Origin: Thalia democratica
Lineage: Eukaryota
NCBI GenBank assembly: GCA_965202585.1
Contig: OZ241830.1
Location: forward strand, 32,860,001 to 32,924,000
Length of the DNA stretch: 64,000 nt
Direction of reading: 5' to 3'
The position numbers and the translations under genes are program-made. The notes under the pieces are model-generated. The model did no database searches. It worked only from the letters and a program-made list of their open reading frames with translations, and was not told the DNA's origin. Below, in pieces: positions 4,303 through 49,963 of the stretch (within the stretch, counting starts at the first letter, position 1; the number at the start of each line of letters is the position of its first letter).

Positions 4303-7300
4303 CTATTCCTTCTTTCCGTAATCCCTTCCGCTTGTGTACGGAGCGAAGGTGTCCCTGGCTTTCGACCTCAACTTAGCAAGACTCGCCTCCGCAGACTCCG
4401 CTCTCTCCTCCGCATCGTCCAGTTCGTGCTGCAGTTTCCGGTACTTCATTAGGTGCATATTCGCCTGCTCCTCCTAGCATAATTATATTCGTTAAAAAAC
4501 TTAGAAGCGATAGAGTTAAAAAGATTAGTAGAGTTTGTTAAGTAAAAGTTTACGCTTGTAAGTATACTTAATAGAAAGTTATGAAGAGTTATCTACCATC
4601 ATACAACGCACCACTCATTCACTTTAACTACTTTTAGCTGTAAAAAGAAAATGATGAATACAATCATTTTATAGAAAATAAGAATAATAAACAACTGGTA
4701 CTTTCGACTCTTTCGGTTTTAAAGTGAAAAAATAAGCTCTTATGTAAAAATCGATTTTCGAACAACTAACAGTTTCTTCGACTTGCCGCTTGTAAGCCTT
4801 CACCTTGGCCTGCAACTTCTCCAGCAGGTCGTGCATCCTCGTCAAATTCTTCTTGTCCTCCTGACCCTGGTACGTCACCTCCTTCACCCTCCTCTCCGAC
4901 TTCCTCAGCTGCTTGGTCACCTCCTGCGTGTGGCGCTGCTCGTTGTCCACCTCGTTCTCGAGCTCGCGAACCTTTCAATGGTATAAGAAACTTTTACGAA
5001 CTTTATTTTGTGTAAAAATATTGTAATATACAACAAGTTTACTTTGTATAATAATAGCATTGTCACATATTTTATTACAATCTGTTCATAAAACCTTTTT
5101 TGAGTAAAAATCCATCCAAAAGATTTACAACAAAAGGTATTTTTAAAATATTTTTATACATTTTTAGAGGCAGCAGCGTAATCTTACCTTGGTTTCGAGT
5201 TTCTGCACTTGCTTCCTGCCTCCCTTCAAAGCAACTTGTTCCGCTTCATCGAGCCTCATCTGCAGGTCCTTCACCGTTTGCTCCATGTTCTTCTTCATCC
5301 TCTCCAAGTGCATCGACTGATCCTGCTCCTTTTTAAGCTCCTCTATCATCATCGCGGCCTTTGAGAATAAAATTATAGTTTTCTAAATATAAGTCTTGAT
5401 TGTTTTTTACTGCACTTTTAGGAAAAACAATAAAGAAAAGTTTAAAAAAGTACAGTTCTCATCCAGGTTTTTAAACATTAAGAATTTTAATTGGTTTATC
5501 TGCGATAAGATCAGTTATATTATTCTCCACAACTCACATCAAAAACAAAGTTTAATACCCTACTACTTTATTGTTATATTAAACTATAGTTTGCTAAAAT
5601 TTCTTTTCTTACTTTAAAAGTAAAACTTCGTAAGAACTAAGTCAAAAACCATTATTTATCTATATAATAAATTCCTCACAACTCACGTCAACCATGGCCT
5701 TCTTCGCTTTATCCTCCGCGTTGCGCTGCTCCTCCACGGCATCTTCTATCTCGCCCTGCAAGTTCTGCACCTCCCCCTCCAATTTTCTCTTGTGGTTGAT
5801 GAGCGCGGTGTTCTGCGTGTGCAGCATGTTCGCCCTCTCTCCCACCTCCATCAGCTCCACCTCCGCCGCCTTCCTGCCGCGTTCGGTTTGCTCCATCGCC
5901 GCACGGATCTCCTCCACCTCCGACTGTTTTGTTATTGTAATTTTGTACATAAAGTTTCTATTTTTTTATTAAGTTTTTAATAAAGACTTTTTTTGTGCTT
6001 TCCTTCCTACTAAAAACAATTGTTTTTATTTTGTAAGTTTTACTCATTGCATAAAAATTGAGTTAACCTTATCCGAAAAAAACATTAATAAAAATTTAAC
6101 AAAAAGAATTGTTTTTAACTCTAATTAACTTTATAGTTAACTTACCCCACAGCTAAGTTAATTTTCTAAAGCATTTAGTATAAGGACACAAACAAGTTGT
6201 TTTAAACACATATTTGTTCTATTCAATCCAACCAACCATCAGTATTGTAGATTTCCTGTCCATGCTGGCGTGCTGTTCCTCCAGCTCCTCATTTCTCCTC
6301 TGCACCTCGTCCAACCGCAGGTGCATGTCCTTGCTCAGCTGCTGCGCCTCCTTCATCTGCCTCACCGCTTCGCCCTGCTGCCTGCACGCGTGCGATACCT
6401 GTGAGGTTAATGGGTTGATGAACGTTGCAGCTTGTATGAACAGGTTTTGTAATGAAAGTTTACTAAGCTGATTCAGTATTTCATATTATAACTTCAACAG
6501 TTAATTATTATTATTTATGTGGTAATATTATCTGGTGGTTTATATTATGCTTCAATTTGTTTGAACTTACATTTATACCTGTCTATAATGGGTAGATGAA
6601 CTTTGCAGTTTGTATTAACAGGTTTTGTAATGAACACTAAACTAAAATAAAAATTTACTAAAATAATTAAGTATTTCATTTTGTATTATAACTTGGATAG
6701 TTTTTGTGCTAATATTTTTAGGTAGTTTGTATTTCTTAAATTTATTTGACGATACATTTACAAGAAGCAAGTAACCAAACTGAAACAAATTATAAAACTA
6801 GTTCAATGTGTTAAAAGAGCTTTATTTGCTTATATTATCATGCAGTCTGTACCATGATTATTTTACTTTTTCGACATAAATAGACAACTAAATAAAAACT
6901 TGTTCAAACCTGCATCTCCAGTTCGTTGATGTCTCCTTCTAGCTTCTTTCTGATCCTGACAGCTTCACTCCTTGCTTTTCCTTCCGCGTCCAACGTGGCT
7001 TGGATCGAGTCTACTGATCTCTGGCCGTTGCGTCTGATTAGAGTTTAGATTTATAAAATATATTGAAACTGTTTAAACAAATAGACAAATCATTGAACTG
7101 TTAAAACTTTTTACAGTAATTCTGCAAAACTTTAAAACAGTTTGTTGATGTGTAATAAACACAGCGTATGAAAAGTACAAATCAAAAAATGTAGATAAAA
7201 GATTGATTTTTTTTATTTACACATAAATTATCTTAAACATTTACTTCTTGGTGGAAACCAAACAATATTGTAGCATTCATAAAACGTTATACAAAATCTA

Positions 7301-49200: not shown

Positions 49201-49963
49201 GTTTTTGTAGATCGCGGTCAGAAATATTCTCCACAGACGACAGCCCCACCCTCCGAAAATGAATTTTGTAGAAGGATGTCGCTGAAAGTCGACTTCAGAA
49301 AACTTAATTGGGAGGTTAATAACACCTTACCTATGTCCTAAGTCCTATAATTAAATAAAATTAGAAACTATATAAGGAACTTTTAACTTAGTCTTTTTCA
49401 AAACACAAGGTTTTAAAACTGTCCTTTTATCGGTTTTTGTTTTTTTTTAATAAAAATTTAGGATTTAAATTTATTAACTTATATAAAAAACTATATAGTT
49501 TTTTTAGCAAATTTTGTGTTCTGATAATTTTTAATCCACTTTCAACAGTTTTCCTAGGTTCTGATAATTAATTTTTTATTAATTAGTTACATTAGTTTTA
49601 CCTAAACCACTTTAAAAGCTTAAATTAATTTGTTTGAGTGAAAGTATTAAAACGAGCAACAACTTTCAGGACTGGATAGTGGCACCGACCCACTACACGG
49701 CTTTCCGGTGCGAGGGCTTGTGCGCCTTTCCCCTCCAAAACCACATGAACGCCACCAACCACGCCATCATGCAGTCCCTGGTCAGCCTCATCCAGCAAAA
49801 CTCCCCTCACCATGGCAACCGCCACCACCAGGAGCCGCTGTCGAACCCGTGCTGCTCGCCCATCGACCTCGACCCCATCACCGTCCTCTACTTCGACGAC
49901 TCGAGGACGGTGCTGTACAAGAAGTACAAGGACATGATCGTCAGGTCGTGCGGCTGCAACTGA
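40267..49963 (+). CDS. BMP5-8: TGF-beta family ligand of the BMP5/6/7/8 (60A/gbb) subgroup, divergent; 8 coding exons, 549 aa
   Basis: GT-AG exons 40267-40500, 40807-41068, 43427-43613, 45281-45471, 47583-47786, 48876-49049, 49211-49314, 49670-49963 (1650 nt, phases consistent). Signal peptide [17 protein letters not shown]. Prodomain motifs [13 protein letters not shown] and GWTMFDV. Furin site RKKR. Seven-cysteine knot FCRR...[19 protein letters not shown]...CC..LYFDDS....[12 protein letters not shown], closest to BMP5-8 ([26 protein letters not shown]). Subgroup assigned by motif recognition only. Confidence 0.9.
44270..44760. promoter_or_regulatory. Candidate intronic enhancer (BMP intron 3) with TAATCC/CCAAT composite sites
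   Basis: TAATCCAAT at 44608 and 44648, further GGATTA sites, GTAAACA, ATTGGCTG; GC-richer than the surrounding intron. Confidence 0.5.
45641..45913. repeat. Perfect 109-bp inverted repeat (arms 45641-45749 and 45805-45913, 55-nt spacer), MITE/foldback-like, in BMP intron 4
   Basis: The arms are exact reverse complements when checked base by base. (TA)n tracts lie nearby. No unambiguous TSD. Confidence 0.92.
46380..46660. promoter_or_regulatory. Candidate intronic enhancer (BMP intron 4) with two more TAATCCAATCA sites
   Basis: TAATCCAATCA at 46547-46557 and 46578-46588 in a GC-richer island. Confidence 0.5.

What the first reader, a model, noticed from the sequence alone, without database searches (positions are those of the whole stretch)
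4303..49963. Exon-length-dependent GC3 landscape: long exons are near-saturated for G/C-ending codons inside very AT-rich introns
Hand counts of G/C-ending codons. Long exons: MYH 4771-4971 (201 nt) 59/67; BMP 49670-49963 (294 nt) 89/97, with the last 49 sense codons all G/C-ending. Short exons of the same genes: MYH 7860-7963 (104 nt) 12/35; MYH 13355-13436 (82 nt) 9/27; BMP 49211-49314 (104 nt) 16/35. In long internal exons the A/T-ending codons cluster at the edges (e.g. the 3' ends of 4771-4971 and 9105-9301). All exons of one mRNA share a tRNA pool, so translational selection alone cannot explain this. Inferred candidates: GC-biased gene conversion confined to long uninterrupted conserved tracts in a hyperpolymorphic genome, nucleosome/exon-definition selection, or A-rich splicing enhancers at exon ends. 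Non-coding regulatory islands are also GC-raised. There are exceptions (the VWA exons are not GC3-high).
Basis: partly seen in the sequence, partly recalled or inferred. Interest (0 to 1): 0.7.

Follow-up and report, generated by a model that had tools for sequence, protein, structure and literature searches.

The report
Exon-length-dependent G/C-ending codons, gene-specific
In this very AT-rich animal genome, some genes (a muscle myosin, a BMP ligand and two other myosins) use more G/C-ending codons the longer the exon and the farther from an intron, and the pattern points to selection on the spliced message, not to biased gene conversion.

Summary
I built full gene models: the myosin heavy chain (MYH) has 42 coding exons, nine junctions confirmed by RNA contigs. 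The BMP gene has 8. Third-position GC (GC3) rises with exon length: rho 0.71 (p=1e-7) in MYH and 0.79 in BMP. This survives control for amino-acid composition and for distance to the exon end.

It is not a rule for long exons. Two paralogous myosins, a third myosin, the neighbouring VWA exons and two RING ORFs stay at GC3 0.2-0.4, even in exons of 276-927 nt.

Introns hold 22-25% GC in every gene, with no spill-over from GC3-rich exons. At four-fold sites the length-dependent rise is G only in MYH, mainly C in two paralogous myosins, and C in BMP. Introns show no strand skew. That excludes plain gBGC and other strand-blind DNA-level causes.

One tandem myosin copy lost six introns. Its GC3 within 90 nt of those sites is 0.71 against 0.61 in its sister (61 vs 28 discordant codons, p=6e-4).

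Best reading: gene-specific selection at synonymous sites, weakened near introns. It is an extreme variant of the known antagonism between introns and codon bias.

Earlier notes of this scan report the same mosaic elsewhere in this genome.

The parts
4303..23918 (-). Sarcomeric myosin heavy chain (MYH) coding region: 42 coding exons, 1947 aa, ATG at 23918, stop TAG at 4305-4303. Exons as lo-hi/length/GC3: 23811-23918/108/.61; 23494-23592/99/.42; 23136-23276/141/.53; 22714-22870/157/.56; 22617-22644/28/.56; 22351-22465/115/.46; 22010-22102/93/.39; 21888-21951/64/.33; 21558-21656/99/.45; 21397-21500/104/.51; 20959-21097/139/.76; 20356-20504/149/.52; 19457-19576/120/.62; 18845-18931/87/.72; 18465-18548/84/.43; 16529-16708/180/.63; 16093-16228/136/.53; 15870-15940/71/.54; 15524-15729/206/.75; 14831-14954/124/.36; 14526-14662/137/.64; 14096-14351/256/.85; 13355-13436/82/.33; 12853-13013/161/.52; 12364-12540/177/.61; 11852-12088/237/.82; 11354-11497/144/.56; 10980-11117/138/.61; 10652-10759/108/.47; 10336-10461/126/.69; 9962-10081/120/.50; 9105-9301/197/.85; 8617-8800/184/.56; 8190-8355/166/.53; 7860-7963/104/.34; 7377-7513/137/.51; 6910-7033/124/.60; 6237-6398/162/.83; 5687-5923/237/.85; 5188-5358/171/.74; 4771-4971/201/.88; 4303-4473/171/.70
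   Evidence: Spliced alignment to the 1943-aa myosin P0014 (67% identity) gives an open 5844-nt CDS; every intron is GT-AG. Nine junctions between 4473 and 9105 are matched by metatranscriptome contigs.
4771..4971 (-).
5687..5923 (-). MYH exon 39 (237 nt, GC3 67/79). The orthologous exon of a sister species keeps GC3 69/79 despite 19 third-position differences.
9105..9301 (-). MYH exon 32 (197 nt, GC3 0.85), cited for A/T-ending codons at its 3' end
7860..7963 (-). MYH exon 35, a short AT3 exon (12/35)
13355..13436 (-). MYH exon 23, a short AT3 exon (9/27)
40267..40500 (+). BMP-like gene, coding exon 1 (234 nt, GC3 0.77). The ATG lies 14 nt after a likely acceptor at 40252.
40822..41068 (+). 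BMP exon 2 (247 nt, GC3 0.80)
43427..43613 (+). BMP exon 3 (187 nt, GC3 0.76); matches TGFb_propeptide profile positions 113-155
45281..45471 (+). BMP exon 4 (191 nt, GC3 0.67); matches TGFb_propeptide profile positions 166-200
47583..47786 (+). BMP exon 5 (204 nt, GC3 0.93)
48876..49049 (+). BMP exon 6 (174 nt, GC3 0.66), basic cleavage-site region
49211..49314 (+). BMP exon 7 (104 nt, GC3 0.46; 16/35)
49670..49963 (+). BMP last exon (294 nt including the stop; 89/97 G/C-ending, the last 49 all G/C-ending); TGF_beta domain, E=4e-24
1080..1241 (+). VWA-domain exon of the upstream gene: an exception, GC3 23/54 over the ORF with its stop codon
2361..2540 (+). Last coding exon of the same upstream gene: an exception, GC3 23/60 over the ORF with its stop codon
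51652..51927 (-). RING microprotein ORF (276 nt): a long uninterrupted ORF with GC3 of only 0.41
55227..55433 (-). Second RING microprotein ORF (207 nt), GC3 0.28

Best explanation
Mutation drives unconstrained DNA in this genome to about 23% GC. In a subset of genes, selection at synonymous sites favours G- or C-ending codons. It acts on the transcript or coding sequence, not on the DNA duplex. Its net strength is low next to introns and in short exons, and high in the interior of long exons, so GC3 tracks exon length.

Shown here:
- The force is gene-specific in strength and in flavour: G in MYH, C in two paralogous myosins, both in BMP.
- It stops at splice sites and drops sharply after the stop codon.
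- It is kept at equilibrium between sister species.
- It is locally higher in the paralog that lost introns than in the one that kept them.

Inferred, not shown:
- Junction-proximal sequence is partly reserved for A/T-rich splicing signals, which gives the edge effect.
- Splicing itself, through junction complexes and intron-dependent RNA processing or export, lessens the need for G/C nearby. Only exon stretches far from any junction would then be pushed to near-saturation, as proposed for human genes by Mordstein et al. 2020.
For: - Length-GC3 correlations in four genes: MYH 0.71, BMP 0.79, C2a 0.40 and C2b 0.62. They are robust to amino-acid content and to removing exon ends.
- At equal distance from an exon end, GC3 is 0.49 in short exons against 0.80 in long ones.
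- Intron GC is 0.225-0.249 whether the gene's GC3 is 0.26 or 0.63, and there is no gradient beside GC3-rich exons.
- The rise at four-fold sites is strand-asymmetric and gene-specific, while introns have no skew.
- Natural experiment: C2b lost six introns that C2a and the outgroup paralogs keep. Within 90 nt of those sites GC3 is 0.708 against 0.613, with 61 vs 28 discordant codons (p=6e-4). Control codons give 133 vs 124. The heterogeneity test gives p=0.006.
- The GC3-poor pair C2c/C2d shows no such effect.
- In a sister species, exon 39 has 24% of third positions changed but GC3 is unchanged (69 vs 67 of 79). A more distant relative with about 40% GC introns has only 43/79.
- GC falls to 0.30-0.34 within 100 nt after the MYH stop codon.
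- Precedent: in human cells splicing compensates for low GC, and retrocopies that lost their introns gained GC4 (PMC7181179).
Against: - No expression, export or splicing data for this organism, so the selected property is inferred.
- Why one myosin prefers G and its paralogs prefer C at the same four-fold sites is unexplained.
- BMP, not expected to be highly expressed, has the highest GC3.
- The C2a/C2b comparison cannot be polarised. The GC3-poor outgroups are uninformative, so 'rise after loss' is the parsimonious reading, not a demonstrated one. The effect is clearest within 30 nt.
- Some long exons inside responsive genes stay moderate (MYH 184 nt at 0.56; C2a/b 278 nt at 0.45).
- The sample is six genes, four of them one family. 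The genome-wide claim rests on unchecked scan notes.
Confidence: 0.5

Rival explanations
1. GC-biased gene conversion restricted to long, well-aligned exon tracts, because heteroduplexes are rejected in hyperpolymorphic, indel-rich introns.
For: - The sequenced individual is highly heterozygous in introns, for example 11 variant sites in 9360-9436, and introns carry many indels relative to a related organism.
- A homology-length threshold would give length dependence, lower edges and sharp borders.
- Non-coding GC-raised islands exist.
Against: - MYH four-fold sites gain only G (0.63 vs C 0.19) and C2a/b gain mainly C, while introns have no skew. A strand-blind process cannot do this.
- Adjacent coding exons (VWA, RING ORFs) and 411-927-nt exons of other myosins are not raised.
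- Intron bases 6-20 nt from GC3-rich exons stay at about 0.27.
- GC falls right after the MYH stop codon, inside the same exon.
- Protein conservation is unrelated to GC3.
Confidence: 0.07
2. Selection for a DNA-level GC contrast that positions nucleosomes on exons and so marks them for exon definition. It would work only for exons about as long as a nucleosome footprint.
For: - Exons are far more GC-rich than their introns, and GC3 climbs steeply between about 150 and 200 nt.
- BMP four-fold sites are roughly strand-symmetric: C 0.37, G 0.35, A 0.16, T 0.12.
Against: - Strong G-over-C asymmetry in MYH, and C-over-G in C2a/b.
- No relation between exon GC3 and flanking intron length.
- 3'UTR sequence contiguous with GC-rich coding sequence is not raised in MYH.
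- Paralogs with long exons and some long introns (C2d) remain at GC3 0.27.
Confidence: 0.12
3. Ordinary translational selection for optimal codons in highly expressed genes, locally overridden by exonic splicing enhancers near junctions (the Warnecke-Hurst trade-off), with nothing else needed.
For: - C2a/b use a classic optimal-codon set (NNC, four-fold T/C, CGY, AAG; A-ending avoided) and their GC3-poor paralogs do not.
- Preferred codons drop in the last and first 15 nt of exons, and A rises there.
- The intron-loss effect is strongest within 30 nt.
Against: - MYH long exons prefer a different set (GCG, GTG, TCG, AGG, even ATA over ATT) from C2a/b, although they share a tRNA pool.
- BMP has the highest GC3 of all.
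- At 15-45 nt from an exon end, long exons are at 0.80 and short ones at 0.49, so a fixed enhancer zone cannot produce the length effect.
- No enrichment at conserved residues, so there is no accuracy signature.
Confidence: 0.15
4. Reverse causation: introns are preferentially gained or retained in A/T-rich coding stretches and lost from G/C-rich ones, so composition determines exon length.
For: - A/T-ending codons flank junctions.
- Intron turnover is active in the myosin family: six losses in C2b and further differences among C2a-d.
Against: - The paired C2a/C2b comparison shows a difference between copies at the same homologous codons, and only near the lost introns.
- From my own recollection of vertebrate MYH genes (not tested here), many MYH exon lengths (157, 28, 93, 64, 99, 104, 139, 256, 197, 184, 166) match vertebrate ones, so most of its introns are ancient, yet GC3 still follows length.
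- The GC3-poor genes are no more fragmented than C2a.
Confidence: 0.08

Closest known systems
Splicing-dependent codon usage / 'splicing buffers low GC content' (Mordstein et al. 2020, PMC7181179)
   Same: Synonymous GC is higher where introns are fewer. Intron loss is followed by a gain in GC: human retrocopies there, the C2b myosin copy here. The effect works at the RNA level, not through tRNAs.
   Different: There it is a modest trend at the level of whole genes or first exons in a GC-heterogeneous mammal. Here it is resolved exon by exon inside one gene, spans 0.33 to 0.93, is gene-specific, and carries G or C flavours. No functional data exist for this organism.
[quoted passage not shown]
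   Same: Preferred codons are depleted near exon-intron boundaries, and codon bias is lower in intron-dense sequence.
   Different: The edge zone alone does not account for the length effect here. The favoured codons also differ between genes that share a tRNA pool.
Intron 'barrier effect' on GC content in Arabidopsis and rice (Ressayre et al. 2015, PMC4684703)
   Same: Composition changes in steps at introns, and intron number structures GC3 along genes.
   Different: In plants the GC-rich parts are the external gene regions, and gBGC is invoked. Here internal exons are as GC3-rich as terminal ones, exon rank has no effect once length is included, and gBGC is disfavoured.
Exon-intron differential GC content and exon nucleosome marking
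   Same: GC-rich exons embedded in AT-rich introns.
   Different: That model predicts a link with long flanking introns and strand-symmetric composition. Neither is seen here.

Membership tests
gBGC footprint | GC elevation affects all nearly neutral sites in the tract, including flanking intron DNA | tested here: not met
   Intron GC is 0.22-0.28 at 6-160 nt from exons with GC3 of 0.7 or more, with no decay. Gene-wide intron GC is 0.225-0.249 regardless of GC3.
gBGC footprint | Strand-symmetric gain (G about equal to C) at degenerate sites | tested here: not met
   In MYH exons of 190 nt or more, four-fold G is 0.63 and C 0.19. In C2a/b exons of 300 nt or more, C is 0.53 and G 0.17. Introns show skew near 0. 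BMP alone is symmetric.
gBGC footprint | AT>GC alleles segregate at higher frequency than GC>AT; link to recombination | not testable with these tools
   Only contig-level data from a few runs were available, and the variant table was truncated.
Splicing-translation trade-off (Warnecke-Hurst) | Preferred codons depleted near exon ends | tested here: met
   The last 15 nt of long exons have 27/48 G/C-ending against 512/593 in the interior (p=1.5e-6); the first 15 nt have 34/47.
Splicing-translation trade-off (Warnecke-Hurst) | One translationally optimal codon set shared by all biased genes | tested here: not met
   MYH prefers GCG/GTG/TCG/AGG. C2a/b prefer GCT/GCC, GTC, CGY and avoid G-ending four-fold codons.
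Splicing-dependent GC requirement (Mordstein et al.) | Synonymous GC higher in sequence with fewer introns (longer exons) | tested here: met
   rho is 0.40-0.79 in four genes, and the relation holds at equal distance from exon ends.
Splicing-dependent GC requirement (Mordstein et al.) | GC gain associated with intron loss | tested here: met
   C2b vs C2a at six lost introns: 0.708 vs 0.613, 61 vs 28 discordant codons; controls 133 vs 124. The direction was not polarised.
Splicing-dependent GC requirement (Mordstein et al.) | Expression or export of A/T-rich RNA depends on splicing | not testable with these tools
   Needs reporter experiments or fractionated RNA-seq.
Exon definition by GC differential / nucleosome marking | The differential is greatest for exons flanked by long introns | tested here: not met
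   GC3 against flanking intron length gives rho from -0.05 to 0.30, none significant.
Exon definition by GC differential / nucleosome marking | Higher nucleosome occupancy on GC-rich exons | not testable with these tools
   No chromatin data.
Methylation-driven composition | CpG depletion in the affected class | tested here: not met
   CpG observed/expected is 0.76-0.98 in all exon classes and 0.58-0.79 in introns. GCG and TCG are preferred codons.

The most novel reading that the evidence does not exclude
Spacing between exon junctions sets an exon-by-exon requirement for G/C at synonymous sites. RNA within roughly 30-90 nt of a junction would be handled by splicing-deposited complexes and may stay A/U-rich. 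Coding stretches farther from any junction must be G/C-ending, in a gene-specific G or C flavour, to be processed, exported or kept from being read as AU-rich intron. In this genome the rule would be strong enough to read directly from raw sequence, and intron loss or gain would rewrite local codon usage.
Probability: 0.25. Interest if true: 0.75.

Novelty: new variant of a known kind. Interest (0 to 1): 0.55.

Why it matters
Synonymous-site selection linked to splicing is debated mostly from weak genome-wide trends in mammals and flies. Here the contrast within single genes is very large: GC3 of 0.33 to 0.93 against introns at 23% GC. The system also offers paralogs with and without the effect, recent intron losses, and sister species present in ocean metagenomes.

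That makes the question directly testable: which RNA-level property is selected, and over what distance does an intron relieve it? It also matters in practice. Gene finders and codon-usage or dN/dS analyses for this genome must not assume one codon usage per gene. GC3-based inferences of recombination or gBGC would be misleading.

Tried and rejected
- **Chance or amino-acid composition:** rejected.
- **Pure distance-to-edge model:** rejected by comparing equal distances from exon ends.
- **Constant number of A/T-ending codons per exon:** rejected. By my own tally from the per-exon GC3 and codon numbers, exons of about 200 nt or more hold 8-17 such codons and most mid-size exons 15-27.
- **Exon rank (5'-3' gradient):** t=0.6 once length is included.
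- **Protein conservation or an accuracy signature:** none.
- **Flanking intron length:** not significant.
- **CpG or methylation:** no depletion.
- **Transcription-associated mutational skew:** intron skews are about 0.
- **Next-base context for the G preference:** none.
- **Cryptic splice-site avoidance:** strong donor- or acceptor-like sites are 4-5 times rarer per kb in GC3-rich long exons. There is no depletion beyond what codon composition gives in 300 synonymous shuffles, and the test has little power.
- **Periodic GC island at 17389-17560:** looked like a hidden exon but is a 21-nt minisatellite.
- **Reads:** only contigs were available and the variant table was truncated, so no allele spectra or expression ranking were possible.
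- **Protein representative search:** returned mostly exon-sized metagenomic fragments. One full-length myosin (P0014) served as the reference.
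Full report
**Setting.** The window holds 28.9% GC, and long stretches hold 22-30%. It lies at C6:32,860,001-32,924,000 of an 802-Mb, chromosome-scale animal genome. 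Names of organisms and runs are coded. Close relatives of the myosin exon occur in Tara Oceans marine metagenomes and metatranscriptomes, so the animal is probably marine and planktonic.

**Gene models.**
- A full-length myosin (P0014, 1943 aa) came from a protein search with one exon.
- My own spliced aligner, using that reference, gave a complete minus-strand sarcomeric myosin heavy chain. It has 42 coding exons, 1947 aa and no stops, every intron is GT-AG, and it is 67% identical to P0014.
- Nine of its junctions between 4473 and 9105 are reproduced by spliced metatranscriptome contigs.
- The BMP-like gene on the plus strand closes into a 544-aa ORF of 8 coding exons with consistent phases. 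Exons 3 and 4 match the TGF-beta propeptide profile colinearly, and the last exon matches TGF_beta at E=4e-24.

**The observation.**
- In MYH, GC3 correlates with exon length (rho 0.71, p=1e-7). GC2 does not.
- The relation survives subtraction of the GC3 expected from each exon's amino acids (rho 0.68). It also survives restriction to codons at least 30 nt from both ends (rho 0.56).
- In a joint regression, only length predicts GC3 (t=5.2). Exon rank and protein conservation do not.
- BMP shows the same relation: its 104-nt exon has GC3 0.46, and its 204- and 294-nt exons have 0.93 and 0.91 (rho 0.79).
- There is a real edge effect. In long exons the last 15 nt have 56% G/C-ending codons against 86% in the interior (p=1.5e-6), and A rises there more than T.
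- The edge effect is not enough. At 15-45 nt from the nearest end, short exons have GC3 0.49 and long exons 0.80 (p=3e-12).

**The pattern is gene-specific.**
- I annotated four paralogous myosin-II genes elsewhere in the genome.
- Two tandem copies, C2a and C2b, have GC3 0.54-0.56 and a positive length relation (rho 0.40 and 0.62).
- Two others, C2c and C2d, have GC3 0.26-0.27 in all exons, including 411-nt ones, with no significant length relation (rho 0.29 and -0.03).
- A further myosin has exons of 358-927 nt at GC3 0.15-0.27.
- Inside the window, the VWA exons 1.8 kb from MYH have GC3 0.38-0.43. Two RING ORFs of 276 and 207 nt have 0.41 and 0.28.
- So 'long means G/C-saturated' holds only where a gene-specific force is present.

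**Evidence against DNA-level causes.**
- Intron GC is 0.225-0.249 in all five myosin genes, whether GC3 is 0.26 or 0.63. Introns beside GC3-rich exons are only 0.03-0.05 higher than others, and flat from 6 to 160 nt.
- At four-fold sites of MYH, G rises with exon length from 0.20 to 0.63 while C stays at 0.18-0.25. This is independent of the next base and appears in both head and tail exons.
- In C2a/b the base that rises is mainly C (about 0.22-0.32 up to 0.53), at the expense of T. In BMP it is C, with G already high.
- Introns have no G/C or A/T skew.
- A strand-blind process such as gBGC, nucleosome preference or regional mutation bias cannot produce these gene-specific, strand-specific flavours.
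- CpG is not depleted, and GCG and TCG are favoured codons.
- GC falls to 0.30-0.34 within 100 nt after the MYH stop. In BMP it falls from 0.50 to 0.36 and then to 0.23.
- The low GC just upstream of both ATGs is uninformative. Each ATG lies only 14-26 nt behind a likely acceptor site.

**Natural experiment.**
- C2a and C2b are 90% identical in protein and differ at 20% of third positions.
- C2b lacks six introns that C2a shares with C2c and/or C2d, so C2b lost them.
- Within 90 nt of those six positions, GC3 is 0.613 in the copy that has the intron and 0.708 in the copy that lacks it. Discordant codons number 28 vs 61 (p=6e-4).
- Codons elsewhere give 124 vs 133, and the heterogeneity test gives p=0.006.
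- When one doubtful C2b-only junction is included, the signal is clearest within 30 nt (14 vs 28).
- The GC3-poor pair C2c/C2d shows nothing at its five differing introns.
- Intron presence therefore goes with lower local G/C-ending usage at homologous codons, but only in genes under the force.

**Evolutionary state.** A metagenomic contig from a sister species carries MYH exon 39 with an identical protein. It has 19 of 79 third positions changed, the same GC3 (69 vs 67 of 79), and introns that no longer align. A more distant relative with about 40% GC introns has only 43/79. The high GC3 is thus maintained under turnover. In this lineage it went together with more AT-rich introns, which fits a directional force on coding sites and not a relic or a shared regional drift.

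**Interpretation.**
- The best-supported reading is selection at synonymous sites acting on the transcript, gene-specific in strength and flavour, and weakened by nearby introns.
- Part of the weakening is the known reservation of exon ends for splicing signals.
- The remainder, which is the length effect at equal distance and the shift at lost introns, resembles the human evidence that splicing compensates for low GC and that intronless copies gain GC (PMC7181179). It also resembles the intron-versus-codon-bias antagonism reported in insects (PMC3804240, PMC2741454) and the step changes at introns in plants (PMC4684703).
- Still unexplained: why MYH takes G while its paralogs take C, why a BMP ligand is the most biased gene, and which RNA property is selected.
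- A test for avoidance of cryptic splice sites was null beyond composition.

**Limits.**
- Six genes, four of them from one family.
- No allele-frequency, expression or chromatin data.
- Earlier notes of this scan report the same exon-level GC3 mosaic in other windows of this genome. I did not check them.

Noticed in passing
163 introns of MYH, BMP and loci L033-L042: The 5' splice sites have T at position +3 in 40% of introns (GTTAGT, GTTTGT) against A in 48% and G in 9%. That is unusual for animals and suggests an altered U1/U6 recognition preference.
   Followed up: partly
window 17389-17560: A GC-raised island with strong 3-base periodicity inside the 1756-nt MYH intron is a minisatellite with a unit of about 21 nt (CCTGCTCGAGTTTTTCC-like), not an exon.
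   Followed up: yes
window 4200-4302: Directly downstream of the MYH stop codon lies a cluster of repeated ATGACATCA / TGACGTCA (CRE/ATF-like) motifs spaced about 15-25 nt apart.
   Followed up: no
L033-L036 (G000:C2:51.18-51.22 Mb) and L037-L042 (C2:40.57-40.67 Mb): Four paralogous myosin-II genes fall into two codon-usage regimes, although they are 80-90% identical in protein and have identical intron GC. C2a/b have GC3 of about 0.55 with a classic optimal-codon set; C2c/d have GC3 of about 0.26. C2b has lost six introns relative to its tandem sister.
   Followed up: partly
window 29935-30097; 34064-35944; 37600-37737; 38944-39071; 44455-44709: Non-periodic GC-raised islands (GC 0.48-0.57), several with CpG observed/expected of 1.3-1.9. 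They lie upstream of and inside the BMP gene and could be promoter, UTR exon or enhancer sequence.
   Followed up: partly
window 9360-9436 and other MYH introns: The sequenced individual is densely heterozygous in introns (11 variant sites in 77 nt), and only 2 of the 27 listed heterozygous sites fall in exons. A related 'organism B' differs by about 3-5% plus many 1-2-nt indels in introns.
   Followed up: partly
window 49670-49963: The BMP-like mature domain ends in CGCN and carries an inserted His/Asn-rich stretch ([16 protein letters not shown]) between conserved cysteines.
   Followed up: no
L007/L012, L043-L044 (G000:C6:45.66-45.68 Mb): A myosin-head gene has very long exons (368, 358, 927 nt), non-consensus-looking donors (GTGTAC, GTGCGA) and GC3 of 0.15-0.27.
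   Followed up: no
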